Assembly (NCBI GenBank): GCA_002269645.1
Contig: NIVC01001238.1
Span: forward strand, 248,001-312,000
Length of the DNA stretch: 64,000 nucleotides
DNA from: Macrostomum lignano
Lineage: Eukaryota
Reading direction: 5' to 3'
The notes under the pieces are model-generated. The model was given only the letters and a program-made list of their open reading frames with translations. It did not search any database and was not told where the DNA came from. This document shows positions 2,353 to 32,732 of this stretch, in pieces. Each line of letters starts with the position of its first letter. Position 1 is the stretch's first letter. The position numbers and the translations under genes were made by a program.

Positions 2353-2359
2353 TATAAAA
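2353..2359 (+). promoter_or_regulatory. TATA box of the repeat-precursor gene
   Basis: TATAAAA about 75 nt upstream of the ATG at 2434. Confidence 0.6.
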
Positions 2360-2433: not shown

Positions 2434-4200
2434 ATGGTACTCAGACAGCCCGCCATACTAAGCTGTTTACTGGCCGTCATCGCTTGCTACATCATTACTA
2501 CTACAGCCGACTGCGAGGAAGTCAGCAATGCGAATAGGGTAATAATCAGGTATCCACCATCTAGATGGATCCGGTACGGAGGCAACGCCAAGAGCATGTC
2601 GAGACGGATCAGGATCGGAGGCAACGCCAAGAGCATGTCGAGACGGATCAGGATCGGAGGCAACGCCAAGAGCATGTCTAGAAGGATCAGGATCGGAGGC
2701 AACGCCAAGAGCATGTCGAGACGGATCAGGATCGGAGGCAACGCCAAGAGCATGTCGAGAAGGATCAGGATCGGAGGCAACGCCAAGAGCATGTCGAGAC
2801 GGATCAGGATCGGAGGCAACGCTAAGAGCATGTCGAGAAGGATCAGGATCGGAGGCAACGCCAAGAGCATGTCGAGAAGGATCAGGATCGGAGGCAACGC
2901 CAAGAGCATGTCGAGACGGATCAGGATCGGAGGCAACGCTAAGAGCATGTCGAGACGGATCAGGATCGGAGGCAACGCCAAGAGCATGTCGAGACGGATC
3001 AGGATCGGAGGCAACGCCAAGAGCATGTCTAGAAGGATCAGGATCGGAGGCAACGCCAAGAGCATGTCTAGAAGGATCAGGATCGGAGGCAAAGCCAAGA
3101 GCATGTCGAGACGGATCAGGATCGGAGGCAACGCCAAGAGCATGTCGAGACGGATCAGGATCGGAGGCAACGCCAAGAGCATGTCGAGACGGATCAGGAT
3201 CGGAGGCAACGCCAAGAGCATGTCGAGACGGATCAGGATCGGAGGCAACGCCAAGAGCATGTCGAGAAGGATCAGGATCGGAGGCAACGCTAAGAGCATG
3301 TCGAGACGGATCAGGATCGGAGGCAACGCCAAGAGCATGTCTAGAAGGATCAGGATCGGAGGCAACGCTAAGAGCATGTCGAGACGGATCAGGATCGGAG
3401 GCAACGCCAAGAGCATGTCGAGAAGGATCAGGATCGGAGGCAACGCTAAGAGCATGTCGAGACGGATCAGGATCGGAGGCAACGCCAAGAGCATGTCGAG
3501 AAGGATCAGGATCGGAGGCAATGCCAAGAGCATGTCGAGAAGGATCAGGATCGGAGGCAACGCCAAGAGCATGTCGAGAAGGATCAGGATCGGAGGCAAC
3601 GCTAAGAGCATGTCGAGACGGATCAGGATCGGAGGCAACGCCAAGAGCATGTCGAGACGGATCAGGATCGGAGGCAACGCCAAGAGCATGTCGAGAAGGA
3701 TCAGGATCGGAGGCAACGCCAAGAGCATGTCGAGAAGGATCAGGATCGGAGGCAACGCCAAGAGCATGTCGAGACGGATCAGGATCGGAGGCAACGCCAA
3801 GAGCATGTCGAGAAGGATCAGGATCGGAGGCAACGCCAAGAGCATGTCGAGACGGATCAGGATCGGAGGCAACGCCAAGAGCATGTCGAGAAGGATCAGG
3901 ATCGGAGGCAACGCCAAGAGCATGTCGAGACGGATCAGGATCGGAGGCAACGCCAAGAGCATGTCGAGACGGATCAGGATCGGAGGCAACGCCAAGAGCA
4001 TGTCGAGACGGATCAGGATCGGAGGCAACGCCAAGAGCATGTCGAGACGGATCAGGATCGGAGGCAACGCCAAGAGCATGTCGAGACGGATCAGGATCGG
4101 AGGCAACGCCAAGAGCATGTCGAGACGGATCAGGATCGGAGGCAACGCCAAAAGCATGTCGAGACGGATCAGGATCGGAGGCAACGCCAAGGGTATCTAA
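2434..4200 (+). CDS. Secreted precursor protein with 41 tandem GGNAKSMSRRIRI repeats (588 aa)
   Basis: ATG at 2434 (gcaATGg) gives a hydrophobic signal peptide (MVLRQPAILSCLLAVIACYIITTTADC), a short pro-region, 41 x 13 aa, then GGNAKGI*. Unit variation is almost all synonymous (CGG/AGG, GCC/GCT, TCG/TCT, AAC/AAT, AAG/AAA), with one N>K at 3091-3093. Confidence 0.85.
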   Translation: MVLRQPAILSCLLAVIACYIITTTADCEEVSNANRVIIRYPPSRWIRYGGNAKSMSRRIRIGGNAKSMSRRIRIGGNAKSMSRRIRIGGNAKSMSRRIRIGGNAKSMSRRIRIGGNAKSMSRRIRIGGNAKSMSRRIRIGGNAKSMSRRIRIGGNAKSMSRRIRIGGNAKSMSRRIRIGGNAKSMSRRIRIGGNAKSMSRRIRIGGNAKSMSRRIRIGGKAKSMSRRIRIGGNAKSMSRRIRIGGNAKSMSRRIRIGGNAKSMSRRIRIGGNAKSMSRRIRIGGNAKSMSRRIRIGGNAKSMSRRIRIGGNAKSMSRRIRIGGNAKSMSRRIRIGGNAKSMSRRIRIGGNAKSMSRRIRIGGNAKSMSRRIRIGGNAKSMSRRIRIGGNAKSMSRRIRIGGNAKSMSRRIRIGGNAKSMSRRIRIGGNAKSMSRRIRIGGNAKSMSRRIRIGGNAKSMSRRIRIGGNAKSMSRRIRIGGNAKSMSRRIRIGGNAKSMSRRIRIGGNAKSMSRRIRIGGNAKSMSRRIRIGGNAKSMSRRIRIGGNAKSMSRRIRIGGNAKSMSRRIRIGGNAKSMSRRIRIGGNAKGI

Positions 4201-4737
4201 GCTTGTAGCAGTTTGTGAAGTTCTGCAATCCATGAATCCTATATACTAAAAATGAGTTGTTTGTTTGTACGCAATCGATTAGAGAAAAAATGGCTGGACC
4301 GATTTTCTTCGAACTTGCACTGTTCGATCAGAAATTTTCCTGGGACGGTACATGCATCTTGGCTAAGAAATTGCTCCATGTTAAAGCGATTAAATATTCG
4401 AAAAACATGCTTTTTTGCAAAGGTCAAGCAAACTTTTCGACTTGAAATGCATTGTAAGAATGCTAGAGAAAAAACTGACTGGTTGAATTCTGATTCTGAA
4501 ATAGATTACATCATAACTGAATTGTAACTCCGACTTGAATTGCGTCACAGTATTGAAAATGCAGTGTGGAAGCGTAGCACCAGACTTTATTTAGATTGCG
4601 CAACAATATTGTTAACTGATACTGACTGACTGAGAAATTGATTATGTAATAACTGCCTCGTGTGATTTACTCTATGCTTGGAGTTTTGAAACTTATAATT
4701 ATAAGTGCTGAATTCATGTTATCAAAACGATGAGAGC

Positions 4738-4791
4738 TAGCCTAGAGGTAAACAGACTGAACTGCTAAATGCAGAAACGATGGTTCGAATT
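4738..4791 (+). promoter_or_regulatory. tRNA-like Pol III A/B-box module inside H1
   Basis: A box TAGCCTAGAGG 4738-4748, B box GGTTCGAAT 4782-4790, T-run immediately after. Confidence 0.5.
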
Positions 4792-4847
4792 TTTAGAGAG
4801 TAGAGTTTTTTTAATTAAAGCTTTTTAACGCCAGGAAAACTAAAAAA

Positions 4848-7800
4848 ATCATAAAAGCGTCATGTAAAAAATCATAGAAGCGTCATGTAAAAAGCATAGA
4901 AGTGTCATGTAAAAAATCGTGGAAGCATCATGTAAAAAGCATAGAAGCGTCATGTAAAAAATCATAGAAGCGTCATGTAAACAATCATAGAAGCGTCATG
5001 TAAACAATCATAGAAGCGTCATGTAAACAATCATAGAAGCGTCATGTAAAAAATCGTAGAAGCGTCATGAAAAAATCATTAAAGCGTCATGTAAAAATCA
5101 TAGAAGAGTCATGTAAAAATCATAGAAGCATCGTGTAAACAATCATAGAAGCGTCATGTAAAAAATCGTAAGAGCGTAATATAAAAATCATAGAAGCGTC
5201 ATTTAAAAAATCATAGAGGCGTCATATAAAAATCAAAAAAACGTCATTTAAAAAATCATAGAAGCGTCATGTAAACAATCATAGAAGCGTCATGTAAACA
5301 ATCATAGAAGCGTCATGTAAAAAATCATAGAAGCGTCATGTAAACAATCATGGAAGCGTCATGTAAACAATCATAGAAGCGTAATGTAAAAATCATAGTA
5401 GCGTCATGTAAAAAATCATAGAAGCGTCATGTAAAAAGCATAGAAGCGTCATGTAAAAAATCATAGAAGCGTCATGTAAACAATCATAGAAGCGTCATGT
5501 AAAAATCATAGAGGTGTCATGTAAAAATCATTGAAGCGTCCTGCAGAAATCGTAGAAGCGTCATGAAATAATCATAGAAGCGTCATGTAAAAAATCAAAG
5601 AAGCGTCATGTAAAAAATCATAGAAGCGTCATGTAAAAAATCATAGAAGCATCGTGTAAACAATCATAGAAGCGTCATGTAAAAAATCATAGAAGCGTCA
5701 TGTAAAAAATCATAGAAGCGTCATCTAAAACATCATAAAAGCGTCATGTAAAAAATCGTAGAAGCGTCATTTAAAAAATCATAGAAGCGTCATATAAACA
5801 ATCATAGAAGCGTCATGTAAACAATCATAGAAGCGCCATGTAAACAATCATAGAAGCGCCATGTAAACAATCATAGAAGCTTCATGTAAACAATCATAGA
5901 AGCGTCATGTAAACAATCATAGAAGAGTCATGTAAAAAATCATAGAAGCGTCATGTAAAAAATAATAGAAGCGTCGTGTAAACAATCATAGAAGCGTCAT
6001 GTAAACAATCAGAGAAGCGTCATGTAAAAAATCATAAAAGAGTCATGTAAAAAATCGTAGAAGCGTCATATAAAAATCATAGAAGCGTCATGTAAAAAAT
6101 CATAGAAGCGTCATGTAAACAATCATAGAAGCGTCATGTAAACAATCATAGAAGCGTCATGTAAGAAATCATAGAAGCGTCATGTAAAAAATCGTAGAAG
6201 TGTCATGTAAAAAATCGTGGAAGCATCATGTAAAAAGCATAGAAGTGTCATGTAAAAAATAATAGAAGCGTCGTGTAAACAATCATAGAAGCGTCATGCA
6301 AACAATCAGAGAAGCGTCATGTAAAAAATCATAAAAGAGTCATGTAAAAAATCGTAGAAGCGTCATATAAAAATCATAGAAGCGTCATTTAAAAAATCAT
6401 AGAAGCGTCATGTAAACAATCATAGAAGCGTCATGTAAACAATCATAGAAGCGTCATGTAAACAATCATGGAAGCGTCATGTAAGAAATCATAGAAGCGT
6501 CATGTAAAAAATCGTCATGAAGTGTCATGTAAAAAATCGTGAAGCATCATGTAAAAAGCATAGAAGTGTCATGTAAAAAATCATAGAAGCGTCATGTAAA
6601 CAATCATAGAAGCGTCATGTAAACAATCATAGAAGCGTCATGTAAACAATCATAGAAGCTTCATGTAAAAAATCGTAGAAGCGTCATGAAAAAATCATTA
6701 AAGCGTCATGTAAAAATCATAGAAGCGTCATGTAAAAAATCATAGAAGCATCGTGTAAACAATCATAGAAGCGTCATGTAAAAAATCGTAAGAGCGTAAT
6801 ATAAAAATCATAGAAGCGTCATTTAAAAAATCATAGAGGCGTCATATAAAAATCAAAAAACGTCATTTAAAAAATCATAGAAGCGTCATGTAAACAATCA
6901 TAGAAGCGTCATGTAAACAATCATAGAAGCGTCATGTAAAAAATCATAGAAGCGTCATGTAAACAATCATGGAAGCGTCATGTAAACAATCATAGAAGAG
7001 TCATGTAAAAAATCATAGAAGCGTCATGTAAAAAATCATAGAAGCGTCATGTAAACAATCATAGAAGCGTCATATAAAAAATCATAGAAGCGTCATGTAA
7101 AAAATCATAGAAGCGTCATATAAACAATCATAGAAGCGTCATGTAAACAATTATAGAAGCGTCATGTAAAAATCATAGAAGCGTCATGTAAAAAATCATA
7201 GAAGCGTCGTGTAAACAATCATAGAAGCGTCATGTAAAAAATCATAGAAGCGTCATGTAAAAAATCATAGAAGCGTCATCTAAAACATCATAAAGCGTCA
7301 TGTAAAAAATCGTAGAAGCGTCATTTAAAAAATCATAGAAGCGTCATATAAACAATCATAGAAGCGTCATGTAAACAATCATAGAAGCGCCATGTAAACA
7401 ATCATAGAAGCGTCATGTAAACAATCATAGAAGCGTCATATAAAAATCATAGAAGCGTCATTTAAAAAATCATAGAAGCGTCATGTAAACAATCATAGAA
7501 GCGTCATGTAAACAATCATAGAAGCGTCATGTAAAAAATCATAGAAGCGTCATGTAAACAATCATGAAGCGTCATGTAAAAAATTATAGAAGCGTCATGC
7601 AAACAATCATAGAAGCGTCATGTAAACAATCATAGAAGCTTCATGTAAAAAATCATAGAAGCGTCATGTAAAAAATCATAGAAGCGTCATCTAAAACATC
7701 ATAAAGCGTCATGTAAAAAATCGTAGAAGCGTCATTTAAAAAATCATAGAAGCGTCATATAAACAATCATAGAAGCGTCATGTAAACAATCATAGAAGCG

Positions 7801-10800
7801 CCATGTAAACAATCATAGAAGCGTCATGTAAAAAGCATAGAAGCGTCATGTAAACAATCATAGAAGCGTCATGTAAACAATCATAGAAGCGTCATGTAAA
7901 AATCATAGAGGTGTCATGTAAAAATCATTGAAGCGTCCTGCAGAAATCGTAGAAGCGTCATGAAATAATCATAGAAGCGTCATGTAAACAATCATGAAGC
8001 GTCATGTAAAAATCATAGAAGCGTCATGTAAAAAATCATAGAAGCATCGTGTAAACAATCATAGAAGCGTCATGTAAAAATCGTAAGAGCGTAATATAAA
8101 AATCATAGAAGCGTCATTAAAAAATCATAGAGGCGTCATATAAAAATCAAAAACGTCATTTAAAAAATCATAGAAGCGTCATGTAAACAATCATAGAAGC
8201 GTCATGTAAACAATCATAGAAGCGTCATGTAAACAATCATAGAAGCGTCATGTAAACAATCATAGAAGCGTCATGTAAAAATCATAGAAGCGTCATGTAA
8301 AAATCATAGAAGCGTCATGTAAAAATCATAGAAGCGTCATGTAAAAAATCATAGAAGCGTCATGTAAAAAATCATAGAAGCATCGTGTAAACAATCATAG
8401 AAGCGTCATGTAAAAAATCGTAGAAGCGTCATTTAAAAAATCATAGAAGCGTCATATAAACAATCATAGAAGCGTCATGTAAACAATCATAGAAGCGTCA
8501 TGTAAAAATCATAGAAGCGTCGTGTAAACAATCATAGAAGCGTCATGTAAAAATCGTAAGAGCGTATATAAAAATCATAGAAGCGTCATTAAAAAATCAT
8601 AGAAGCGTCATGTAAACAATCATAGAAGCGTCATGTAAACAATCATAGAAGCGTCATGTTAAAAATCATAGAAGCGTCATGTAAAAATCATAGAAGCGTC
8701 ATGTAAACAATCATAGAAGCGTCATTTTAAAAATCATAGAAGCGTCATGTAAAAATCATATAAGCGTCATGTAAACAATCATAGAAGCGTCATGTAAACA
8801 ATCATAGAAGCGTCATGTAAAAAATCGTAGAAGCGTCATGAAAAAATCATTAAAGCGTCATGTAAAAATCATAGAAGCGTCATGTAAAAAATCATAGAAG
8901 CATCGTGTAAACAATCATAGAAGCGTCATGTAAACAATCATAGAAGCGTCATTAAAAAATCATAGAAGCGTCATATAAAAATCAAAAGCGTCATTTAAAA
9001 ATCATAGAAGCGTCATGTAAACAATCATAGAAGCGTCATGTAAACAATCATAGAAGCGTCATGTAAAAAATCATAGAAGCGTCATGTAAACAATCATGAA
9101 GCGTCATGTAAACAATCATAGAAGAGTCATGTAAAAAATCATAGAAGCGTCATGTAAAAAGCATAGAAGCGTCATATAAACAATCATAGAAGCGTCATAT
9201 AAAAATCATAGAAGCGTCATGTAAAAATCATAGAAGCGTCATGTAAAAATCATAGAAGCGTCATGTAAAAATCATAGAAGCGTCATGTAAAAATCATAAA
9301 GCATCGTGTAAACAATCATAGAAGCGTCATGTAAAAAATCATAGAAGCGTCATGTAAAAAATCATAGAAGCGTCATATAAACAATCATAGAAGCGTCATG
9401 TAAACAATCATAGAAGCGTCATGTAAAAATCATAGAAGCGTCATGTAAAAAATCATAGAAGCGTCATGTAAACAATCATAGAAGCGTCATGTAAAAATCA
9501 TAGAAGCGTCATGTAAAAATCATAGAAGCGTCATCTAAAAATCATAAAGCGTCATGTAAAAAATCATAGAAGCGTCATTAAAAATCATAGAAGCGTCATA
9601 TAAACAATCATAGAAGCGTCATGTAAACAATCATAGAAGCGCATGTAAACAATCATAGAAGCGTCATGTAAACAATCATAGAAGCGTCATATAAAAATCA
9701 TAGAAGCGTCATTAAAAAATCATAGAAGCGTCATGTAAACAATCATAGAAGCGTCATGTAAACAATCATAGAAGCGTCATGTAAAAAATCATAGAAGCGT
9801 CATGTAAACAATCATAGAAGCGTCATGTAAAAATTATAGAAGCGTCATGCAAACAATCATAGAAGCGTCATGTAAACAATCATAGAAGCGTCATGTAAAA
9901 AATCATAGAAGCGTCATGTAAAAAATCATAGAAGCGTCATCTAAAACATCATAAAGCGTCATGTAAAAAATCGTAGAAGCGTCATTTAAAAAATCATAGA
10001 AGCGTCATATAAACAATCATAGAAGCGTCATGTAAACAATCATAGAAGCGCATGTAAACAATCATAGAAGCGTCATGTAAAAATCATAGAAGCGTCATGT
10101 AAACAATCATAGAAGCGTCATGTAAACAATCATAGAAGCGTCATGTAAAAATCATAGAAGCGTGTCATGTAAAAATCATAGAAGCGTCCTGCAAAATCGT
10201 AGAAGCGTCATGAAAAATCATAGAAGCGTCATGTAAACAATCATGAAGCGTCATGTAAAAATCATAGAAGAGTCATGTAAAAAATCATAGAAGCATCGTG
10301 TAAACAATCATAGAAGCGTCATGTAAAAATCGTAAGAGCGTAATATAAAAATCATAGAAGCGTCATTTAAAAAATCATAGAGCGTCATATAAAAATCAAA
10401 ACGTCATTTAAAAAATCATAGAAGCGTCATGTAAACAATCATAGAAGCGTCATGTAAACAATCATAGAAGCGTCATGTAAACAATCATAGAAGCGTCATG
10501 TAAACAATCATAGAAGCGTCATGTAAAAAATCATAGAAGCGTCATGTAAAAATCATAGAAGCGTCATGTAAAAATCATAGAAGCGTCATGTAAAAAATCA
10601 TAGAAGCGTCATGTAAAAAATCATAGAAGCATCGTGTAAACAATCATAGAAGCGTCATGTAAAAATCATAGAAGCGTCATGTAAAAAATCATAGAAGCGT
10701 CATCTAAAACATCATAAAAGCGTCATGTAAAAATCATAGAAGCGTCATTAAAAAATCATAGAAGCGTCATATAAACAATCATAGAAGCGCCATGTAAACA

Positions 10801-11190
10801 ATCATAGAAGCGCCATGTAAAAATCATAGAAGCATCGTGTAAACAATCATAGAAGCGTCATGTAAAAAATCGTAAGAGCGTAATATAAAAATCATAGAAG
10901 CGTCATTTAAAAAATCATAGAAGCGTCATGTAAACAATCATAGAAGCGTCATGTAAACAATCATAGAAGCGTCATGTTAAAAATCATAGAAGCGTCATGT
11001 AAAAAATCATAGAAGCGTCATGTAAACAATCATAGAAGCGTCATTTTAAAAATCATAGAAGCGTCATGTTAAAAATCATATAAGCGTCATGTAAACAATC
11101 ATCGAAGCGTCATCTAAAAATCATAGAAGCGTCATGTAAAAAATCATAGAATCGTCATGAAAAAATCATAGAAGCGTCATTTAAAAACTA
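4848..11190. repeat. 23-bp satellite array in H1 (consensus AAACAATCATAGAAGCGTCATGT), roughly 275 units
   Basis: Direct reading of tandem units; variant blocks recur as higher-order duplications. Confidence 0.97.
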
Positions 11191-11279
11191 ATGAAAGTGT
11201 CATTTAAAAAATTAAGAAGCATCATAGTAGAATAAAAGAAGCGTCATGTCAGACATGAAAGGTGTCATGGAAAAATTAA

Positions 11280-12240
11280 ATGCAGCTATAATGCTGTGCT
11301 GGGGAGAAAAACTGAGACGTCAAGGCTCTCAGAGAATAACTGAGATTACGGGGGGGGGGTTTCTGAGATGTCAAAGCAAAAGTCAGAAGCTAATTCAAAG
11401 TTCATGTACTTTACTCAATTTTTTTATTGCATTCTTTGTTGGCTCGCCACGGGAGGCGCTGATAGAAGAAGAGTCATGTAAAAAATAAAAGTAGCACTAT
11501 GTATACATAAAAGAAAAGTCATGTCGAAGTTAAAAGATTCATTTGGGAATTGCTACGATGTCAAAGCTTGGTGGAAATCGTTATAGTGCTGTGATTCTTA
11601 AAGAAGGAATCACTAAAATGTCAAGGCTTAGGGGAGAAGAATTGCTGAGATTTCAAGGCTTTATGTTGGGTTAAAGTTAGGTTTAGGTCAGGTGTGGGTT
11701 GAGGGTTATATTTTATCGAGTTTCAAGGTTAGCAGGGGATTTTTCAGATTTCAAGGTTTATGGGCGCCATCGCTGACATGTTAAGGCTTACGGGGGAATA
11801 GCTGAGATGTCAAGGCTCACGGGGGTATAAATGAGATTTCAAGGCTAAAGTCAGAAGCTACATGTAGTTTATTGAAAACTTTTTATTACATTATTTGATG
11901 CCTCCTCAGGGGAGGGATCGCTGATTAAAAAAGCGTAATGTAAAAAATAAAAGAAGCTTCATGTCGAAGTTAAGATATTCATTTGGGAATCCCTACGATG
12001 TCGAGGCTTGCAGGGAATCGCTATAATGCTGTAGTAGTGCTATAATGACTCTTAAAGAGAATTACTGAAATTTCAATGCTTTAGGGTTAGGTTAGGGTTA
12101 GGGTTAGAAGGTTGACAGATATTTTTATATTTCCAAGGCTTATTGGGGGCATGGCTGAGATGTCAAGGGGGGAAGTTGATATGTTAAAGCTTGTGGGGGG
12201 GAATTACTGACATGTCAAGGCTTACAAGGTTTGATAGGAG
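11280..12240. repeat. Degenerate GAGATGTCAAGGCT-motif repeats, internal ~450-bp duplication and short TTAGGG run in H1
   Basis: Motif recurs throughout; 11380-11640 resembles 11845-12070; TTAGGG-like run at 12081-12107. Confidence 0.7.
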
Positions 12241-12809
12241 ATTTTTTAAGATTTCAAGGATACATGTAGCTTATTAAAAAAACGTGTATTGCATTTCTTT
12301 GGCTCCCCAACGGGGGGCGTAGATTGCTAGTCCTATATACTAAAAATGAGTTGTCTGTATGTGGGTAGGTATGCGATAGATTTCGGAAAAAATGGCTCAA
12401 CCGATTTTCTTCAAACTTGCACCATTCGATCAGAAAATTTCCTGGGACGGTACATGCATCTTGGCTAAGAAATTGCTCAATTTTAAAGGGATTAAATATT
12501 CGAAAAACATGCTTTTTTGCAAAGGTCAAGCAAAATTTTCGACTTGAAATGCATTGTAAGAATGCTAGAGAAAAAACTGACTGGATGAATTTCAATTGTG
12601 ATAAAGATTGCATCACAACAAGGTGAAAACAGTGCCACAGAAACGCACACAAGACTTGATTAAAATTGCGTAACAATATTGCTAACTTAAATTAAGACTG
12701 ATACTGGCTGACTGAGAAATTCATTATGTCATAAAATTTTACTCTAACCGACTTGCTGTAAGAATTGAATTATAAGGGCCACAATTCATGTGCTCCAATT
12801 GAAAAAAGA

Positions 12810-12862
12810 TAGCCTAGATGCGAACAGACTGGACTGCTAATGTAGCGACCTGGGTTCGAATC
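12810..12862 (+). promoter_or_regulatory. tRNA-like Pol III A/B-box module inside H2
   Basis: TAGCCTAGATG 12810-12820, GGACTGCTAAT anticodon-loop-like segment, GGTTCGAATC 12853-12862, T7 run near 12880. Confidence 0.55.
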
Positions 12863-12914
12863 TTGGTAGCGCAAAATGATTTTTTTATTAAAACACCTTA
12901 AAAACAAAAAACTG

Positions 12915-15830
12915 CTAAACATAAAAGAAGCGCAATGTCAAACATACAAGAGCCACCATGTCAAACATAAAACAGACACCATGTCGAACATTAAAGAGCC
13001 ACCATGTCAAACATAAAAGAACCACCATATCAAACATTAAAGAGCCACAATTTCAAAAATTAAAGAGCCACCATGTCGAAGATTAAAGTGCTACCATGTC
13101 AAACATAGAAAGCCACCATGTCAAACATTAAAGAGCCACAATGTCAAACACAAAAGAGCCACCATTTCAAACCTTAAAAAGCCACCATGTCGAACATTAA
13201 AGAGCCACCATGTCGAACATAAAAGAGCCACCATGTCGAACATAAAAGAGCCACCATATCAAACATAAAAGAACTACCATGTCAAACATTAAAGAGCCAC
13301 CATGTCGAACATTAAAGAGCCAACATGTCAAACATAAAACAGACACAAATAAAAACATTAAAGAGCCACCATGTCGAACATTAAAGAGCCACCATGTCAA
13401 ACATTAAAGAGCCACCATGTCAAACATAAAACAGAGCCACCATTTCGAAAAGTAAAGAGCCACCATGTCAAACATTAAAGAGCCACCATGTCGAACATAA
13501 AAGGGCCACCATGTCAAATATTAAAGAGCCACCATGTCAAACATTAAAGAGCCACCATGCCAAACATTAAAGAGCCACCATGCCAAACAAAAAAGAGCCA
13601 CCATGTCGAACATAAAAGAGCCACCATGTCAACCATAAAAGAACCACCACGTCAAGCATATACATTACTCCATGTCAAACATAAAAGAGCCACCATGTCA
13701 AACATTAAAGAGCCACCATGCCAAACATTAAAGAGCCACCATGTCAAACATTAAAGAGCCAGCATGTCAAACATAAAAGAGCCACCATGTCGAACATTAT
13801 TGAGCCACCATGTCAGACATTAAAGAGCCACCATGCCAAACATAAAAGAGCCACCATATCAAACATAAAAAAGCCACCATGTCAACCATAAAAGAACCAC
13901 CACGTCAAGCATATACATTACTCCATGTCAAACATTAAAGAGCCACCATGTCAAATATTAAAGAGCCACCATGTTAAACATAAAAGAGCCACCATGTCAA
14001 ACATTAGAGCCACCATGTTGAACATTAAAGAGCCACCATGTCAAACATAAAAGAGCCACCATGTCGAACATTAAAGAGCCACCATATCAAACATAGAAGA
14101 GCCACCATGTCAAGCATATATGACTCCATGTCCAACATTAAAGAGCCACCATGTGGAACATTAAGGAGCCACCATGTCAAAAATTAAAGAGCCCCCCATA
14201 TCGAACATAGAAGAGCCACCATGTGGAACATTAAAGAGCCACCATGTCAAACATTAAAGAGCCTACATATCAAACATTAAAAAGTTACCATGTCAAACAT
14301 TAAAGAGCCACCATGTTGAACATTATTGAGCCACCATGTCAGACATTAAAGAGCCACCATGCCAAACATAAAAGAGCCACCATATCAAACATAAAAGAAC
14401 TACCATGTCAAACATTAAAGAGCCACCATGTCGAACATTATTGAGCCACCATGTCGAACATCAAAGAGCCACCATGCCAAACATAAAAGAGCCGCCATGT
14501 CAAACATAAAAAAGCCACCATGTCAACCATAAAAGAACCACCACGTCAAGCATATACATTACTCCATGTCAAACATTAAAGATCCACCATGCCAAACATA
14601 AAAGAACCGCCATGTCAAACATAAAAAAGCCACCATGTCAACCATAAAAGAACCACCACGTCAAGCATATACATTACTCCATGTCAAACATTAAAGATCC
14701 ACCATGCCAAACATTAAAGAGCCACCATGTCAAACATAAAAGAGCCACCATGTTAAACATAAAAGAGCCACCATGTCAAACATTAGAGCCACCATGTTGA
14801 ACATAAAAGAGCCACCATGCCAAACATTAAAGAGCCACCATGTCAAACATTAAAGAGCCACCATGTCAAACATAAAAGAGCCACCATGTCAAACATTAAA
14901 GAGCCACCATGTCAAATATTAGAGCCACCATGTTGAACATTAAAGAGCCACCATGTCAAACATAAAAGAGCCACCATGTCGAACATTAAAGAGCCACCAT
15001 ATCAAACATAGAAGAGCCACCATGTCAAGCATATATGACTCCATGTGCAACATTAAAGAGCCACCATGTGGAACATTAAGGAGCCACCATGTCAAAAATT
15101 AAAGAGCCCCCCATATCAAACATAGAAGAGCCACCATGTGGAACATTAAAGAGCCACCATGTCAAACATTAAAGAGCCTACATATCAAACATTAAAAAGT
15201 TACCATGTCAAACATAAAAGAGCCACCATGTCAAACATTAAAGAGCCACCATGCCAAACATTAAAGAGCCACCATGTCAAATATTAAAGAGCCACCATGT
15301 CAAACATAAAAGAACCACCATGTAAAGCATATATGTGACTCCATGTCTAACATTAAAGAGCCACCATGTAGAACATTAAAGAGCCACCATGTCAAACATA
15401 TAAGAGACTTTATTTCAAACATAAAAGAGCCACCATGTTGAACATTAAAGAGCTACCATGTCAAACATTAAAGAGCCACCATATCAAACATTAAAGTTCC
15501 ATCGTGTCGAACATTAAAGAGCCACCATGTCGAACATATAAGAGACTTTATTTCAAACATAAAAGAGCCAACCATTTCGAACATGAAAGAACCACCATGT
15601 CGAACATAAAAGAGCCACCATTTCTAATATAAAAGAGCCACCATGTCGAACATAAAGGAGCCACTATGTCGAACATAAAAGAGCCACCATGTTGAAACTT
15701 AAAGAGCCAACCTGTAAAACATTTAAAAGATTCACCATGTCAAACATATAAGTGACTTCATTTCAAACATAAAAGAGCCACCATGTCAAACATAAAAGAT
15801 ACACAATTTCAAACGTAAAAGTGAGCGAAT
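12915..15830. repeat. 23-bp satellite array in H2 (consensus CAAACATTAAAGAGCCACCATGT), roughly 125 units
   Basis: Direct reading of tandem units. Confidence 0.97.
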
Positions 15831-15884
15831 TTTAAAGGAGCCACTATAATGCTAAGGAAATTGTCGCACTAGCTACTTATTGTC

Positions 15885-16047
15885 TGGTGGATGCTTGCTA
15901 TTTGGGGATGCTATCTATCTGGGGGATGCTTGCTAGCTTGTATCTTGGGGATGCTTGCTATCTGGGGGATGCTTGCTATCTGGGGGATGCTTGCTATCTG
16001 GGGATGCTTGCTATTTGGGTGATGCTTGCTATCTGGGGGATGCTTGC
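15885..16047. repeat. 18-bp minisatellite GGGGGATGCTTGCTATCT, left part
   Basis: Tandem units interrupted by the LINE; the array resumes at 21820. Confidence 0.92.
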
Positions 16048-16345: not shown

Positions 16346-16526
16346 ATGCGGGTCTGGCTTGCCAGCCTGCAGGCCGTGGTACTGCTTAACGTACCCCTAA
16401 TGCCTAAGGTGTTTGACCGTGCCGATGGGCTGGAAGGCCGGGGGTTGTCCGGTCGCTAGCGGTCCTTTTCTTTTTCTTCTTTCCTCTTTCTTTTGTGACT
16501 CAGCTCACTCCTTCCCGCTTTCAGCT

Positions 16527-17993
16527 ATGGCGTCATCCGCCTCTTTAACCCCCGCTGAAGCCGGGGCCCCGGCAACTCCGGCCGGTGACTCTGGCACCAG
16601 CGCCGCCCCACCGGGGGCAGATGGGCTTGCCGCCGGCTCGGCTGGTGACATGCCCGCACGCGCAACCGGGCCCTCCGCTGAAGCCCGACGCACCCGCAAC
16701 CAACGCCGCAACGAGCGGCGACGGCGACTACGGGGTACTGCGGGCCGGCCACCGGCGGAAGGGGAACCTAGGGAGGGCGAGGCTGCTGTTGGGCCGAAAG
16801 GAACCACAGCAACCCCTGCCCCCCAGGATACAACCCCCGCTGGTGAGCCACCCAGTATACCTGCTACAAGCGCGGCCGGGCCTTCGGGAACCGCCGCCAC
16901 CAACTACGCCTCAAAGGTCAAGCTCCAACCGGCGGTCATCGTCTTCGGGGAAGAGCAGGACCTCACGGCCGACGAGCTCGACAGTGCCTGGCGCACCATC
17001 GATGCTGCGCTCATCGACCAGCTCCTGGCGGGCCGCCCTGTGAGCGTGGTCAAGTCTGCCAAGACCGACGGCTGCATCTTCATCTGGTGCAGCTCGGAGG
17101 AGAGCAGCCGCAATCTACGCGAGCTTCTGCCAAAGCTGAACTGGCCCAAGAAGCTCGGCAAGCTCGTCTTCGCCAGCGAGGGCGAACGACAGAAGACCCA
17201 GCGCTTTCGCGTCTGGATCCCGGCCGGCAGTGCCATTAAGTCCGGAGATCAGCTTAGGCAAATATTGCTAAAGCTGCACCCCGACCTTAAGGTCAACGGG
17301 CTCCTACACCACGCCACTTCCCGCAAGGAGAAGGGGGCTACGGTGATCCTAGGGCTCTCTGATGACTGGGCTAAGCGCTTGCCGCCTAAGTCCACAATTC
17401 ATATTGGTCTGACTCAGCTGACCATCCTCCGTTGCGAGGAGCGGAAAGCTGATGAAGCCAAGAATGCCAAAGCTTCCGAAACCGGAACTGGGGCCCAGGC
17501 TCCTCCGGCAAAGAAGCCGAGGCAAACGGCCGATCCTATGCCCGGTAAGGCAGTTCGCGCTGCTGAAACCGGAAATCGCAATCGCAGACCCGCCAGGAGC
17601 ACCCGGAGGTCCGGCCTGATCCAGCGCGCGCTGGACCAGGCCAAGAACCTTCGTGCGCATCGTGAGCGGGCCCGCGCTTCTCGCGCTCCACCCCAACAGC
17701 CAGAAGGCCAGACTCTAAGCGGGGAGGCTCCGACCGACTGGTTCGAGTCTGTGACTCACCAGGAGGCTGGCGCCACCCGCATCGACCTGACCGACGAGGC
17801 AGAGGGGACGGGCAGTGACAGCACCGAAGCACGCAGGAGAGGCGACGGTAACGTCCACGCTGGGCTCACGTCCGCGGAGGACTCCACAGCCACCCTAACT
17901 GCTGAGGACGCTGAAACTCCCATGGAGGTCTGCGGGTCACCCACCACTGAAAAGGAGGAGGATGACCTGCTCAACGATTCCCCAACTGCGTGA
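16527..17993 (+). CDS. Retrotransposon ORF1 (gag-like nucleic-acid chaperone)
   Basis: Open frame with ATG at 16527 (alternative ATG 16425). Ala/Pro/Arg-rich N-terminus, central globular region (FRVWIP...LHPDL), acidic C-terminus. No CCHC knuckle seen. Lies directly upstream of the pol ORF. Confidence 0.85.
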   Translation: MASSASLTPAEAGAPATPAGDSGTSAAPPGADGLAAGSAGDMPARATGPSAEARRTRNQRRNERRRRLRGTAGRPPAEGEPREGEAAVGPKGTTATPAPQDTTPAGEPPSIPATSAAGPSGTAATNYASKVKLQPAVIVFGEEQDLTADELDSAWRTIDAALIDQLLAGRPVSVVKSAKTDGCIFIWCSSEESSRNLRELLPKLNWPKKLGKLVFASEGERQKTQRFRVWIPAGSAIKSGDQLRQILLKLHPDLKVNGLLHHATSRKEKGATVILGLSDDWAKRLPPKSTIHIGLTQLTILRCEERKADEAKNAKASETGTGAQAPPAKKPRQTADPMPGKAVRAAETGNRNRRPARSTRRSGLIQRALDQAKNLRAHRERARASRAPPQQPEGQTLSGEAPTDWFESVTHQEAGATRIDLTDEAEGTGSDSTEARRRGDGNVHAGLTSAEDSTATLTAEDAETPMEVCGSPTTEKEEDDLLNDSPTA

Positions 17994-17995
17994 TA

Positions 17996-20900
17996 ATGAT
18001 CAGCAACCAGGGAATCCATTGCCTGCAGATTAATCTGCAGCACTGCGTCGCAGCCTCGGTCAACCTTATGCGTTACGCCGAGCTCGACAAGCCGGGGCTC
18101 ATCCTCGTCCAGGAACCCTGGACTCTCAGAGGTAAGCCTCAAAACGCCCCTGCTGGCTACAATTGTTTTTATACTTACCCTCGCGAGGCCAACCAGCCTC
18201 CCAGAGCTTGCATCTTTGCGAGCAAAACGCTCAGTGCGTGGCTCAGATCGGACCTGTCCAACAGGGACATCTGCGTCATCCAATCCGAGGACCTTCTTCC
18301 TGGGAAGACCACCCTCATTGCCTCGGTTTACCTACCAGGCGATGCTGCGGTCGTCCCCAGAGCCCTCGCTACGCTGGTAGAGCTCTGCTCTGCCAAAAAC
18401 TACGAGCTCATGGTTGCCGGCGACATCAACGCCCACCACACTCACTGGGGCAGCACTGGCATTAATCAGAGAGGCGAAGACCTCCTAGCCTACGTTGCCT
18501 CTACGACCCTCGAGTTCTGCAACTCTGGGTCCACCCCTACCTTTGACAACGGACGGTGGTCGGAGGTGATCGACGCTACGCTCGCAACGCCCAGACTCTA
18601 CCAGAGTATTGGGGCGTGGCGGGTGCTTCCAGTGTCCTCACTATCGGATCACAAGTTCATCTCCTTCAACCTAATGGCCGCGCGTAGCGCAACTCGTGTT
18701 ATGTGGAGACGGAACGCCAGAAATACTGATTGGGAAACCTTCGGGCTCGCCCTGAAGGAATTCCATCGGTCTCCTGGCCAACCATTCACGATCACGTCGT
18801 GCCGAGAGGCGGATGAGTGCGCGACTGTTTTGACAGAGACGCTAACCGCCGCCTTTGAGGCGTCCTGCCCTTTAAAAGCCTATAAAGGGAAAAAATCGGC
18901 GCCGTGGTGGAATCCCGAGCTCGGCAACCTCCGTCGCAGGGCTAAGAGACTCCACCGCAGAGCAACTAAAACTAAGAGCCCTGCAGACCAAACCGCCTAT
19001 CATGAAGCAATTCATGAGTTTAAAAGGCAGGTTAGGAATGCAAAGGCTCAAAAATGGCGACAATACTGTGAGGAGCTAGAGGGCTCACGCCCCACCTCCA
19101 GAGTTGTGAAAGCGCTCACGCTGGACAAAATGTCTAAGCTCTCCTCGGTCAAACGCACCGACGGTACGTCCACGGACAACCCAGGGGAAACGCTTGATGT
19201 AATGCTCACTGCGTTTTTCCCTAACGAGCCAGCTAACCAGACCACTCCGGATCACTCGGAGGGAGGTCACGCGCTGGCTGCATCTATCATCACGGAGGAC
19301 CGCATTGTGAGAGCGGCAAATTCCTTCAAGCCTTTCAAAGCCCCAGGACCCGACGGCATTGTACCGGCCCTTCTAAGAGAGGCGGTTAAATGCCCAGGCT
19401 TCCTGCGCAAACTTTGCAGCCTTCTTCGGGCATGCATCACGCTTGGTTATGTCCCGCAGGCATGGACCGAGGCAAAGGTGATCTTTATCCCTAAGCCAGG
19501 CCGCCCGGACTACCATTCTATCAAATCCTTCAGACCGATCAGCTTGACCTCCTCCCTGGTCAAGCTGATGGAGAGACTGGTGCTTTGGCGCCTTCTCTCT
19601 GTTGAGCTGAAGAACAAACCTCTCAGCGAGAACCAGCACGCTTTTCGGGCGGGTCGCTCCACTGAAAGCGCGCTGCACGTCCTGGTCGATAAACTCGAGA
19701 AGGCCGTGCTTGGTAGTGGCTTTGCTCTGGGGATCTTCCTGGACATCATTGGCGCCTTCGATAACGTCCTCTTTGAGGCGTTCCGAAGAGCTCTTTGTGA
19801 GAGGCTAACGCACTCACATCTCACCAGATGGATCATGTACATGATCAGCCATCGCACGGCCACCGCCAGTCTGCTGGGCTACCAGAGGACGGTCCCCGTC
19901 TGCAAAGGTAGCCCGCAAGGTGGGGTGCTGTCTCCAGTTCTCTGGAATATGGTCATCGATGAGCTCCTCCGGGATGTTCGGCCTGACCCCATTCTGAAAG
20001 TTGGATATGCGGACGATGTCACCGCGGTGGCATCTGGTCCGTCCCCTGATACCCTCAGGGACCTTCTTCAGAACTTCATCTACGCTGCTGAGCAATGGGC
20101 GGACCGCTGTGGTTTAAGGCTCTCTGAGACTAAGACCGCAGCGATCATGTTCACCAGCAGGACCAAGTGGCAGATTCGGCCGCTCACGCTTTACGGAAGG
20201 GAAATCCCCTTCTGCAAGCAGACTAAATGTCTGGGTATTACCCTGGACCACAGGCTGAACTGGTCTCCCCACGTTCAAACAAAAGCCAAAAAGGCCTTCG
20301 CAGTCCTCGCGCAATTGCGCAGGGCCGTCGGCACCACCTGGGGGCTCACCCCCAAGCGCCTCTGGTGGATCTACACTGCAATGGTTAGGCCCGCTATCTC
20401 GTATGGCGGCCTGATCTGGGCTAGCGCCCTGCAGATAAAGACCTGTCTAGAGGCTCTCAGGAGAGCGCAAGGGCGCGCTTGTCGCACGATCATGAGCGCC
20501 CCTCCGTCTGCTCCTTACGATGGCCTCAACGCCTTCCTCAACATTCCTCCGCTGGACATCTTTGTCCGCAGGGAAGCGGCTAAGACTGCCCGCCGTCTAG
20601 CTGACGCTGGCATTCGAATCCAGCCCCATAGGGCCATGGCTAAGCGCAAGCTTCTGCCCCACGCTGACCTCTGCCTCAAGGACTTGAGAGACAGCGGCGG
20701 GCTCCACGTCCTATCTGACGGCGAACCCCGCACTCTCAACCTCTTTCAGCGCTACAAGGTCACCATCCCCTCTAGGGATGCTGCCAATGACCACTGGAAT
20801 TTCCAGGAGGTCCATTGCTACACGGACGGATCCATCAAAGACGGTCGCGCCGGCTTTGGGGTCTGCATCATCATCAACGGCCGCGTAATTGCCACGCATG

Positions 20901-21819: not shown

Positions 21820-22020
21820 GGGGGATGCTTGCTATCTGGGGATGCTTGCTATTTGGGTGATGCTTGCTATCTGGGGATGCTTGCTATCTGGGGATGCTTG
21901 CTATCCGGGGGATGCTTGCAATCTGGGGGATGCTTGCTATCTGGGGGATGCTTGCTATCTGGGTGATGCTTGCTATCTGGGGGATGCTTTCTCTCTGGGT
22001 GATGCTTGCTGTCTTGGGAT
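21820..22020. repeat. 18-bp minisatellite GGGGGATGCTTGCTATCT, right part
   Basis: Same unit as 15885-16047. Confidence 0.92.
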
Positions 22021-27497: not shown

Positions 27498-27893
27498 TCA
27501 TTTGCTAATGGTGAAATCGGCAAAGGGGCAGTCGGTGCTGGGGCCCTCCTCCGTGAACACGGCCTTGTCGATGCGGCTCCTCTTGCTGCCCTTGGTTCTC
27601 AGCCAGCGCTTGAACTCCTCCAGCTGCGGCGCGGGCCCGCAGGCCTCGCCGAGCACCGTTCCGTGCTCCGTGTTGAGCACGTAGCCGACCAGGCCGAGCC
27701 GGCATGCCTCCTCCTTGGTGTGCTTGCGAAAGAAGACGCCCTGCACTTTTCCGTGGATTTCGAATTTCACATGGTGCAGCGGGCTGTCCAATTTTGCAGC
27801 TGGCGCGGCGGCTGCGGCTGGGAAATGCGAGGCGCGGGCAGCACGCGGCACCGGGACAGATCTGGCGGCGCCTGACCTGCCTACAGCGGACAT
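27498..27893 (-). CDS. ACYP: Acylphosphatase, intronless, with N-terminal extension (131 aa)
   Basis: FEIHGKVQGVFFRK and GYVLNTEHGTV motifs (catalytic Arg and Asn), GSKRSRI; ATG at 27893. Confidence 0.93.
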   Translation of the reverse strand: MSAVGRSGAARSVPVPRAARASHFPAAAAAPAAKLDSPLHHVKFEIHGKVQGVFFRKHTKEEACRLGLVGYVLNTEHGTVLGEACGPAPQLEEFKRWLRTKGSKRSRIDKAVFTEEGPSTDCPFADFTISK

Positions 27894-32427: not shown

Positions 32428-32732
32428 GCCTCACCTGTACCACGACATTCTCCCTGAGGCCTCACCTATACCAGCGCCATTCCTCCTGAAGTCTAACCTG
32501 TACCAGCGACATTCAACCCGAGGCCTCACCTGTACCAACGCCATTCCCCCTGAAGCCCCACCTGTACCAGCGCCATTCCCCCTGAAGCCTCTCCTGTACC
32601 AACGCCATTCCCCCTGAAGCCCCACCTGTACCAACGCCATCCCCCTGAAGCCTCTCCTGTACCAACGCCATTCCCCCTGAAGCCCCACCTGTACCAACGC
32701 CATCCCCCTGAAGCCTCACCTGTACCAGCGCA
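32428..32732 (-). repeat. 32-bp minisatellite spanning the HS3ST exon 1/intron 1 junction
   Basis: Minus-strand unit GCGCTGGTACAG|GTGAGGCTTCAGGGGGATG, about 9 copies. Confidence 0.9.

What the first reader, a model, noticed from the sequence alone, without database searches (positions are those of the whole stretch)
2434..4200. Secreted precursor of 41 near-identical cationic 13-mers under purifying selection
Seen: a TATA box, a signal peptide and 41 copies of GGNAKSMSRRIRI (+4 charge each, no acidic residues). Unit differences are nearly all synonymous, which a neutral minisatellite would not be expected to show. Each unit has a dibasic RR and an RxxR site, and the lead-in RWIRY-G and the repeat RRIRI-G loosely echo flatworm YIRFamide-type peptides. 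However, the G-K/R-R amidation signature of a classical neuropeptide precursor is absent. Inference: a multi-copy peptide precursor (IRIGGNAKSMS or similar; antimicrobial, toxin or signalling) or an unprocessed polycationic mucus/adhesive polymer. I recognise no family for it.
Basis: partly seen in the sequence, partly recalled or inferred. Interest (0 to 1): 0.8.

Follow-up and report, generated by a model that had tools for sequence, protein, structure and literature searches.

The report
Secreted polycationic 13-residue repeat protein, flatworm
This is very probably a real, intronless gene of the flatworm Macrostomum lignano that encodes a secreted protein of 41 near-identical, strongly positive 13-residue units with no known family; its expression and function are untested.

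Summary
An ORF runs from ATG 2434 to TAA 4200 on the + strand (588 aa). It has a signal-peptide-like N-terminus, a 23-residue lead-in and 41 in-register 39-nt units encoding GGNAKSMSRRIRI, one of them GGKAK…. The net charge is about +167, and the repeat has no acidic residue.

The window is from Macrostomum lignano or a very close relative, where tandem repeats are abundant. Five of six frames are open across this array, so the ORF alone proves little.

Frame-specific evidence favours the + frame:
- a TATAAAA 81 nt upstream and a first ATG in good context;
- a signal-like N-terminus, found in only 2 of 378 ATG-ORFs in the window;
- GC3 of 0.85;
- 5 of 6 distinct unit variants synonymous (p≈0.003). 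An antisense frame scores the same by count, so "purifying selection" is suggestive only.

The only relative found is a chimeric automated gene model from a syntenic M. lignano locus with the identical unit. I found no family, paper or solved structure.

I favour an intact polycationic, β-rich secreted material that binds polyanions, functionally like the KR-rich regions of Mlig-ap1. A 41-copy peptide precursor is the main rival. Expression could not be checked. Interest is moderate.

The parts
2353..2359 (+). TATA box (TATAAAA), 81 nt upstream of the start codon; putative core promoter
   Evidence: Read directly and found by pattern scan. No ATG lies between it and 2434.
2434..2508 (+). Start codon (context GCAATGG) and signal-peptide-like N-terminus MVLRQPAILSCLLAVIACYIITTTA. 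Cleavage after about residue 25 is inferred.
   Evidence: Hydropathy and the (-3,-1) rule. Only 2 of 378 ATG-ORFs in the window pass the heuristic. The syntenic model P0063 keeps it with R4G, delA7 (in frame) and I16L.
2509..2577 (+). Short mature N-terminal lead-in DCEEVSNANRVIIRYPPSRWIRY. It holds the only acidic residues and the only Cys of the mature protein. Its last residues (about 2554-2577) are a degenerate partial repeat unit.
   Evidence: Identical in P0063 except Y47I.
2578..4176 (+). 41 in-register 39-nt units encoding GGNAKSMSRRIRI (one GGKAKSMSRRIRI at 3085-3123)
   Evidence: Units are 98.2% identical to their consensus with no indels. Five of 6 distinct variants are synonymous in this frame. 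GC3 is 0.85, against 0.64-0.79 in real exons of the window. AlphaFold2 best model has pLDDT 84, with 10-residue strands and 3-residue turns.
4177..4200 (+). Truncated, degenerate last unit GGNAKGI followed by the TAA stop (4198-4200)
4389..4394 (+). ATTAAA, the nearest candidate polyadenylation signal, 190 nt after the stop (inferred, untested)
   Evidence: Pattern scan. There is no AATAAA between 4200 and 4843.
4237..4819 (.). Context only. The 3' flank is a repeated element, with a 74% identical copy at 12331-12892. Each copy is followed by a 23-nt satellite (4843-11249 and 12917-15821).
   Evidence: blastn of the flank against the window; Tandem Repeats Finder.

Best explanation
The window comes from Macrostomum lignano or a very close relative.

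Positions 2434-4200 (+) are a lineage-restricted, intronless protein-coding gene with its own TATA promoter. The product enters the secretory pathway through an N-terminal signal peptide.

The mature protein is about 62 kDa. It has a 23-residue head, with one Cys and the only acidic patch (DCEE), followed by 41 copies of GGNAKSMSRRIRI. Net charge is about +167.

My preferred mechanism is inferred, not shown. The chain is used largely intact as a polycationic secretory material.
- Each unit forms one β-strand (AKSMSRRIRI) plus a Gly-Gly-Asn turn.
- The units stack into a regular β-rich rod or sheet. One face carries K, M, R, I, I and the other carries A, S, S, R, R.
- The arginine/lysine ladder binds polyanions electrostatically. 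Candidates are sulfated or carboxylated glycans of mucus, glycocalyx, egg or adhesive secretions, or microbial surfaces.
- The role would be cohesive, condensing or possibly antimicrobial, functionally like the Lys/Arg-rich regions of the M. lignano adhesive protein Mlig-ap1.

The array is kept homogeneous by unequal exchange. Its length, and so its valency, would be the selected property.

I put the gene being real and + strand at about 0.8, and the whole statement including the intact-polymer mechanism at about 0.45.
For: Organism:
- The LINE ORF2 at 17990-21700 is 98% identical to an M. lignano UniRef protein.
- The syntenic model P0063 matches the EF-hand exons of the window at 96-100%.

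Gene on the + strand:
- TATA box, first ATG in the GCAATGG context, and an ORF that ends exactly at the array edge.
- A signal-like N-terminus, rare in the window at 2 of 378. The other hit is a genuine secretory-pathway gene.
- GC3 of 0.85 in this frame, against 0.31 and 0.62 in the other + frames and 0.64-0.79 in real exons.
- Five of 6 variants, and 28 of 29 occurrences, are synonymous (p = 0.0032). This is the most extreme value among the window's arrays.
- A second, syntenic locus keeps the ORF and the identical unit. Its only indel in the N-terminus is in frame.

Intact polymer rather than precursor:
- It is 588 aa with no spacers. Planarian prohormones were defined as <200 aa with flanking basic sites (PMC2953531).
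- There is no Gly-basic amidation site and no acidic pro-region.
- Both candidate convertase sites (RR|I and RRIR|I) have Ile at P1'. This is disfavoured according to established convertase specificity (my own knowledge).
- AlphaFold2 gives a regular 10-residue-strand / 3-residue-turn architecture with pLDDT 84 in the best model. The same DNA read in frame +1 gives pLDDT 49 and pTM 0.19.
- The same species secretes Mlig-ap1, whose extremely cationic Lys/Arg-rich regions (more than 3,600 aa together) are modelled as binding negatively charged carbohydrates (PMC6410801).
Against: - I could reach no transcript, proteomic or in situ evidence.
- The only database relative is an obviously chimeric automated model, so it is not evidence of expression.
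- The synonymous-variant test rests on six events and is matched by an antisense frame.
- Tandem repeats make up about 15% of this genome (PMC5730564), and the window is full of them.
- The gene's 3' flank is itself a repeated element.
- The AlphaFold2 model is single-sequence. Its five models range from pLDDT 38 to 84, it has no significant structural neighbour, and it ignores the electrostatic cost of about +4 per 13 residues.
- Every unit does carry RR and RxxR, so processing into peptides cannot be excluded.
- The tissue, and hence the actual role, is unknown.
Confidence: 0.45

Rival explanations
1. Polyprotein precursor. After signal-peptide removal, a furin- or PC-type convertase cuts every unit at RR| or RRIR|, and a carboxypeptidase trims the basic residues. 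This would release about 41 copies of one short non-amidated peptide, such as IRIGGNAKSMS or IGGNAKSMSRRI. The peptide would act as an antimicrobial, defensive or signalling molecule.
For: - Signal peptide plus many identical short units, each carrying a dibasic RR and a minimal furin motif RxxR.
- Two of the three planarian prohormone criteria are formally met: a signal sequence and basic sites (PMC2953531).
- Multi-copy precursors for neuropeptides and antimicrobial peptides are a well-known design (my own knowledge).
Against: - 588 aa against the <200 aa criterion.
- No amidation Gly-basic site, no spacers, and no acidic pro-segment to neutralise +167.
- Ile at P1' of both candidate sites is disfavoured (my own knowledge).
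- No similarity to any known flatworm npp/spp/FaRP precursor or any other protein.
- The predicted peptide has no protecting modification or amphipathic design.
- AlphaFold2 predicts a folded repeat.
Confidence: 0.27
2. Not a functional protein gene. It would be a 39-nt minisatellite, in a genome and window dense with them, that happens to be open in five frames and to abut an ATG with a hydrophobic stretch. At most it would be a very young, unconstrained de novo ORF.
For: - Five of six frames are open.
- The window holds dozens of arrays, and tandem repeats make up about 15% of the genome.
- The 3' flank is a repeated element tied to a 23-nt satellite.
- No protein or transcript record exists beyond a chimeric ab initio style model.
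- Six-event statistics are fragile, and three of the five variable sites lie in CpGs.
Against: - Independent features coincide in one frame: TATA box, first ATG in good context, a rare signal-like N-terminus (2 of 378), high GC3, and a stop at the array edge.
- Synonymous-biased variation is the most extreme among the window's arrays.
- The ORF and the unit are retained at a second, diverged syntenic locus.
- Only this frame gives a confident fold prediction.
Confidence: 0.2
3. The coding strand is the minus strand. The product would be either the hydrophobic (LALPPILIRLDML)n frame or the acidic (DPDPSRHALGVAS)n frame starting at ATG 4233.
For: - The -1 frame also has 5 of 6 variants synonymous (p = 0.006).
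- The -0 frame has an ATG at 4233 and a 588-aa ORF.
Against: - In the -1 frame the commonest variant (16 units) is R/L non-synonymous, so only 13 of 29 occurrences are synonymous. That frame has no distinct start outside the repeat.
- In the -0 frame 4 of 6 variants are non-synonymous.
- Neither frame has a signal peptide or a well-placed promoter.
- Pfam hits are sub-threshold repeat noise.
Confidence: 0.03

Closest known systems
Mlig-ap1, adhesive (cohesive) protein of Macrostomum lignano: its Lys/Arg-rich regions (Wunderer et al. 2019, PMC6410801)
   Same: It comes from the same species. It is secreted and repetitive, with extremely cationic Lys/Arg-rich regions. These are modelled as binding negatively charged carbohydrates. 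It has no homologues outside the lineage. Its high K/R content makes it hard to see by tryptic mass spectrometry.
   Different: The KR regions of Mlig-ap1 alone comprise more than 3,600 aa. [quoted passage not shown] The present protein is 588 aa, has no Pfam domain and has a different 13-mer unit. It showed no detectable similarity to anything but its own paralogue or allele. Its expression site is unknown.
Flatworm neuropeptide / peptide-hormone prohormones (npp, spp and FaRP/YIRFamide precursors; Collins et al. 2010, PMC2953531)
   Same: Signal sequence, basic residues in every unit, repeated peptide units.
   Different: It is 588 aa rather than <200 aa. It has no Gly-basic amidation site, no RFamide motif and no spacers. 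Ile sits at P1'. There is no sequence similarity.
Tandem-repeat cationic structural and adhesive proteins of other invertebrates, e.g. mussel foot protein-1 with its decapeptide repeats (my own knowledge)
   Same: A signal peptide followed by tens of near-identical short basic repeats that are homogenised at the DNA level. Such proteins are used intact as an extracellular material.
   Different: There is no Tyr/DOPA or Pro/Hyp chemistry. The charge comes mainly from Arg. There is no homology. A material role is not demonstrated here.
Multi-copy polyprotein precursors of antimicrobial or antifreeze peptides, e.g. honeybee apidaecin, Drosophila Baramicin, notothenioid AFGP polyproteins (my own knowledge)
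   Same: One ORF encodes dozens of identical short peptides, so there is a potential for stoichiometric release of many copies.
   Different: Those precursors have recognisable spacer and processing modules between the units. Here the units abut directly, and the only candidate sites lie inside the unit in an unfavourable P1' context.

Membership tests
Flatworm peptide prohormone (criteria of Collins et al. 2010) | N-terminal signal sequence | tested here: met
   Met by heuristic only, since no SignalP was available. The n-region has R4, the h-region is AILSCLLAVIACYII, and TTA|D fits the (-3,-1) rule. Only 2 of 378 ATG-ORFs in the window pass.
Flatworm peptide prohormone (criteria of Collins et al. 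2010) | Basic cleavage sites flanking the predicted peptides | tested here: inconclusive
   RR and RRIR occur in every unit. Both have Ile at P1', which is disfavoured for convertases (my own knowledge). No cleavage data exist.
Flatworm peptide prohormone (criteria of Collins et al. 2010) | Precursor shorter than 200 aa | tested here: not met
   588 aa. The criterion is quoted from PMC2953531.
Flatworm peptide prohormone (criteria of Collins et al. 2010) | Peptides detected by mass spectrometry, or neuronal/endocrine expression | not testable with these tools
   No transcriptome, peptidome or in situ data were reachable.
FaRP / YIRFamide-type neuropeptide precursor | Units ending in aromatic-x-R-F followed by Gly and a basic site (amidation signal) | tested here: not met
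   Units end in RRIRI followed by GGNAK. There is no Phe, and no Gly-Lys/Arg.
Mlig-ap1-type flatworm adhesive protein | [quoted passage not shown] | tested here: not met
   No Pfam hit reaches its cut-off. The mature protein has one Cys. Family features are taken from PMC6410801.
Mlig-ap1-type flatworm adhesive protein | Extremely cationic Lys/Arg-rich repetitive region | tested here: met
   Four basic residues per 13, no acidic residue in the repeat, and pI about 12. This is a resemblance in composition, not homology.
Mlig-ap1-type flatworm adhesive protein | Expression in adhesive gland cells and a non-adhesion phenotype on RNAi | not testable with these tools
   This needs in situ hybridisation and RNAi.
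Polyprotein antimicrobial-peptide precursor (apidaecin / Baramicin type) | Units separated by dedicated processing or spacer modules (furin RxK/RR, dipeptidyl spacers, acidic pro-pieces) | tested here: not met
   Units abut without a spacer, and there is no acidic residue in the repeat. Only the minimal RxxR motif is present, inside the unit.
Neutral non-coding minisatellite | No frame-specific signal: variants spread over codon positions, no start, signal or stop architecture | tested here: not met
   Five of 6 variants are synonymous in frame +0 (p = 0.0032), against a best value of 0.017 in control arrays. The TATA/ATG/signal/stop architecture is present. The statistics rest on few events.

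The most novel reading that the evidence does not exclude
An animal-encoded, secreted polycationic β-solenoid or cross-β rod. It would consist of 41 stacked strand-turn units presenting a continuous arginine ladder. It would work as a protamine-like condenser or cross-linker of polyanionic glycans in a flatworm gland secretion, such as rhabdite, mucus, cement or adhesive granules. This would be a new protein family and a new structural solution for bioadhesion or granule packing.
Probability: 0.15. Interest if true: 0.7.

Novelty: new variant of a known kind. Interest (0 to 1): 0.4.

Why it matters
If expressed, this is a compact gene of 1.8 kb with no introns. It lies in a genetically tractable flatworm where transgenesis and RNAi are established. 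It encodes one of the most highly charged regular polypeptides one could design: +4 per 13 residues, repeated 41 times.

It could serve as a simple model for how secretory cells make, pack and deploy extreme polycations. It could also be a new building block for understanding or copying charge-based temporary adhesion, mucus organisation or surface defence in flatworms.

If it is instead processed, it would define a new non-amidated flatworm peptide made at 41 copies per transcript through atypical cleavage sites.

It also shows that coding minisatellites can hide among the abundant non-coding arrays of this genome and get lost in chimeric gene models.

Tried and rejected
Searches that found nothing:
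- Word-indexed homology search with the full protein gave no hit at E ≤ 0.01 among 8,000 candidates. The same search with the N-terminus plus 2 units found no candidate sharing words. Both missed P0063, so these negatives are weak.
- Exact look-ups of the target, the acylphosphatase and P0063 in the contig collection found nothing on record.
- A full-text search for four 8-mers of the unit found 0 papers.
- The supplements of the prostate/seminal-fluid screen (PMC5977470) held no peptide or DNA strings from the gene.
- A metagenome scan gave 46 pattern matches but no relative.
- The PDB sequence search gave no hit. The Foldseek PDB search had no match better than E = 0.58.
- Rfam and tRNA scans of the window found nothing.

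Hits examined and rejected:
- Pfam hits (PCF11 RFEG repeat on the + frame; PROL5-SMR, Peptidase_M15_4 and Lysostaphin_N on the antisense frame) are sub-threshold or single-repeat noise.
- The 44 weaker hits of the exhaustive search (for example RLGGDALRLGLEL-type repeats) are unrelated low-complexity repeat ORFs, not homologues.

Readings considered and rejected:
- An RIRI-amide product would need cleavage between the two Gly residues, with no basic residue there.
- Monobasic cleavage after Lys has no basic residue at P4, P6 or P8.
- P0063 is not evidence of expression. It chains several genes and even antisense sequence, and contains frameshifted repeat stretches.
Full report
**1. What is in the sequence**

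The + strand carries an ORF from ATG 2434 to TAA 4198-4200, 588 codons long. Tandem Repeats Finder reports one array at 2563-4191 with period 39, 41.8 copies, 96% matches and no indels.

Read in the frame of the ATG, there are 41 complete units from 2578 to 4176.
- Forty encode GGNAKSMSRRIRI and one (3085-3123) encodes GGKAKSMSRRIRI.
- A truncated unit, GGNAKGI plus the stop codon, closes the ORF.
- The residues just before the array (…PPSRWIRY, about 2554-2577) are a degenerate partial unit.
- Each unit has K plus 3 R and no acidic residue.
- The whole protein has a net charge of about +167 and a pI of about 12. D26, E28 and E29 are its only acidic residues, and C27 is the only Cys after the hydrophobic N-terminus.

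**2. Is it more than a minisatellite?**

The window is extraordinarily rich in tandem arrays. One search lists 71 rows, including a 6.4-kb 23-nt satellite that starts 640 nt downstream of the gene. Five of the six frames are open across the 39-nt unit. An ORF of this length therefore means nothing by itself. What counts are features specific to one frame.

(a) *Promoter and start.* TATAAAA lies at 2353-2359. The first ATG after it is 2434, in the context GCAATGG. This is also the first in-frame ATG after the stop at 2200.

(b) *Signal peptide.* The N-terminus MVLRQPAILSCLLAVIACYIITTTA|DCEE has a basic n-region, an uncharged hydrophobic core and a small-residue (-3,-1) site.
- SignalP was not available, so I wrote a crude heuristic.
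- It passes only 2 of the 378 ATG-initiated open stretches of at least 40 codons in the window.
- The other hit is the N-terminus of a sulfotransferase gene (MKHLL…[13 protein letters not shown] at 32943, minus strand), a genuine secretory-pathway protein.

(c) *Codon bias.* GC3 of the unit is 0.85 in this frame, against 0.31 and 0.62 in the other + frames. Real exons in the window (EF-hand gene, acylphosphatase, LINE ORFs) have GC3 of 0.64-0.79.

(d) *Variation among units.*
- The 41 units differ at 5 sites by 6 distinct changes.
- Five of these are synonymous in the + frame: AAC>AAT, GCC>GCT, AAG>AAA, TCG>TCT and CGG>AGG.
- One singleton is not synonymous (AAC>AAA, N>K).
- So 28 of 29 variant occurrences are silent. 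The binomial p is 0.0032 against 23% expected.

Two cautions apply to point (d).
- The antisense frame that shares wobble positions, (ILIRLDMLLALPP)n, also scores 5 of 6 (p = 0.006). There, however, the commonest variant (16 units) is an R/L replacement, so only 13 of 29 occurrences are silent.
- The test rests on six events, and three of the five variable sites (four of the six variants) lie in CpG dinucleotides.
- As a control I ran the same test on ten other period-multiple-of-3 arrays in the window. The best array-frame combination reached p = 0.017 and all others were above 0.06.
- The signal is real but modest, at about 0.02 after correcting for six frames. "Purifying selection" is suggested, not demonstrated. 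The near-identity of the units themselves reflects recent homogenisation.

**3. Where it comes from, and its only relative**

The intact LINE at 16413-21700 has an ORF2 with endonuclease, reverse transcriptase and RNase H domains. That ORF2 is 98% identical to a Macrostomum lignano UniRef protein, and many further hits come from that species. The window is therefore M. lignano or a very close relative.

This genome is a recently duplicated "hidden polyploid". More than half of it is repetitive, tandem repeats make up about 15%, and it contains extensive duplicated blocks (PMC5730564; PMC12869490).

An exhaustive phmmer search of 1.84 billion representative proteins gave one true hit, P0063 (E = 1e-216), and 44 weak hits. 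The weak hits are unrelated repeat ORFs.

P0063 (UniParc UPI0007A11E81) is a 1137-aa automated model with these properties.
- It strings together an upstream gene, this ORF, the EF-hand gene of the window (exons 25484-26291, 96-100% identical), sequence antisense to the acylphosphatase gene (81% identical) and further + strand ORFs out to about 32.9 kb.
- It is thus a chimera from a syntenic but diverged copy of this locus: a homeologue, a paralogue or a haplotype.
- It is not evidence of expression.
- It does show that a second copy keeps the ORF and the same unit GGNAKSMSRRIRI over more than 20 units. Its frame-shifted stretches look like assembly errors.
- It also keeps the N-terminus at 44 of 48 positions. 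The differences are R4G, an in-frame deletion of A7, I16L and Y47I, and three of the four lie in the signal peptide.

Nothing else turned up.
- No Pfam family reaches its cut-off.
- There is no PDB sequence match and no metagenomic relative.
- No paper contains the peptide strings.
- The ISH-screen supplement I could search held nothing.
- The two word-indexed searches found nothing. They also missed P0063, so they carry little weight.

**4. How it most likely works**

*Shown.* The architecture is TATA box, ATG, signal-like peptide, a 23-residue head, 41 cationic units and a stop.

*Inferred.* Secretion, and what happens afterwards. Two mechanisms compete.

Precursor model.
- Every unit contains RR and RRIR, a minimal furin RxxR motif.
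- Cleavage plus carboxypeptidase trimming would give IRIGGNAKSMS, IGGNAKSMSRRI or IGGNAKSMS (masses).

Intact-polymer model. The evidence leans this way for five reasons.
- The protein is three times longer than the <200 aa limit used to define planarian prohormones (PMC2953531).
- It has no spacers, no acidic pro-pieces and no Gly-basic amidation site.
- Both candidate sites have Ile at P1'. This is poorly tolerated by proprotein convertases (my own knowledge of convertase specificity, not tested here).
- AlphaFold2, run on the mature head plus 14 units, predicts a strictly periodic architecture: 10-residue strands (AKSMSRRIRI) joined by 3-residue GGN turns.
  - The best model has pLDDT 84 and pTM 0.69.
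  - As a control, the same DNA read in frame +1 (EATPRACRDGSGS) gives pLDDT 49 and pTM 0.19. The confident prediction is therefore not just a by-product of perfect repetition.
  - The five models vary from pLDDT 38 to 84. Foldseek finds no significant neighbour (best E = 0.58), and most of its weak matches are β-helix or solenoid proteins.
  - I treat this as a hint of β propensity only.
- M. lignano is known to secrete an extreme polycation. The Lys/Arg-rich regions of the adhesive protein Mlig-ap1 comprise more than 3,600 aa together. They are modelled as binding negatively charged carbohydrates and giving cohesion (PMC6410801).

I therefore favour a polycationic, β-rich secreted material that binds polyanions. 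Candidate partners are mucus or adhesive glycans, egg or cement material, glycocalyx and microbial surfaces. Array length, and so valency, would be the selected trait. The single N-terminal Cys is possibly available for dimerisation, which is speculation.

My confidences are about 0.8 that it is a real + strand gene, 0.45 for the whole statement with the polymer mechanism, 0.27 for the precursor model, 0.2 for a non-functional array or ORF, and 0.03 for antisense coding.

**5. Comparison with what is known**

- It works most like the KR-rich regions of Mlig-ap1, or like cationic tandem-repeat adhesive proteins such as mussel foot protein-1. It is not a member of those families, because it has no shared domains and no homology.
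- It fails the length and amidation criteria for flatworm prohormones.
- It lacks the spacer and processing modules of the apidaecin, Baramicin and AFGP polyproteins.

It is best described as a new, lineage-restricted family within the known kind [quoted passage not shown].

**6. What would settle it**

- Strand-specific RNA-seq, RAMPAGE, spliced-leader and poly(A)-site tracks for M. lignano.
- Positional and regeneration expression sets.
- The genomes and transcriptomes of other Macrostomum species.

After that, the needed experiments are in situ hybridisation or a promoter-GFP line, non-tryptic or top-down mass spectrometry, convertase RNAi, and biophysics of synthetic repeats (details under decisive next steps).

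**7. Verdict**

This is a credible orphan gene with a striking product. It has no expression evidence and no determined function, in a genome where coding and non-coding minisatellites are hard to tell apart. Interest is 0.4.

Noticed in passing
window 4843-11249 and 12917-15821; flanks 4237-4819 and 12331-12892: There are two large arrays of a related 23-nt A-rich satellite, with 283 and 126 copies. Each is preceded by a copy of the same roughly 580-nt element (74% identical). The first copy starts only 37 nt after the stop codon of the repeat gene. This looks like a composite satellite-bearing repeat unit, possibly a mobile element.
   Followed up: partly
window 16413-21700 (+): A full-length non-LTR retrotransposon with two intact ORFs. 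ORF1 is 526 aa. ORF2 is 1236 aa and has endonuclease, reverse transcriptase and RNase H domains. GC content is about 60%. ORF2 is 98% identical to an M. lignano protein, so the element is possibly recently active. It is flanked on both sides by an 18-nt GGGGGATGCTTGCTATCT array (15883-16047 and 21820-22018).
   Followed up: partly
window 25484-25633, 25976-26101, 26184-26291 (+): Exons of an EF-hand (calmodulin-like) gene. They are 96-100% identical to the corresponding part of the chimeric model P0063. In Pfam they give only weak EF-hand hits on single exons.
   Followed up: partly
window 27498-27926 (-): A single-exon acylphosphatase gene (Pfam PF00708, E = 5e-22) with an Ala/Arg-rich N-terminal extension. 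The chimeric model P0063 reads this region on the wrong strand.
   Followed up: partly
window 32716-32943 (-) and 30417-30692 (-): The likely first and last exons of a carbohydrate sulfotransferase. The first has a signal/anchor followed by the [13 protein letters not shown] motif. The last ends …FYWDDV. The two exons are separated by microsatellite-filled introns. Neither exon was confirmed by Pfam: the last exon gave no hit, and the scan of the first exon failed on coordinates.
   Followed up: no
window about 12085-12110: A short interstitial run of TTAGGG-like telomeric repeats (ttagggttaggttagggttagggtta). It lies inside the degenerate repeats between the two satellite blocks.
   Followed up: no
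window 31000-64000: About 33 kb that is almost continuously tiled by dozens of different micro- and minisatellites with periods of 4-47 nt, several reaching hundreds of copies. Many are open in several frames and yield spurious repeat "proteins". None has a signal-like start.
   Followed up: partly
protein hits P0064-P0107: Unrelated database "proteins" built from 13-residue repeats with an hRhGG[DN]A-like motif (for example LRLGGDASRLGLE) score up to E = 1e-16 against the query. This shows how repeat ORFs cross-match without any homology.
   Followed up: yes
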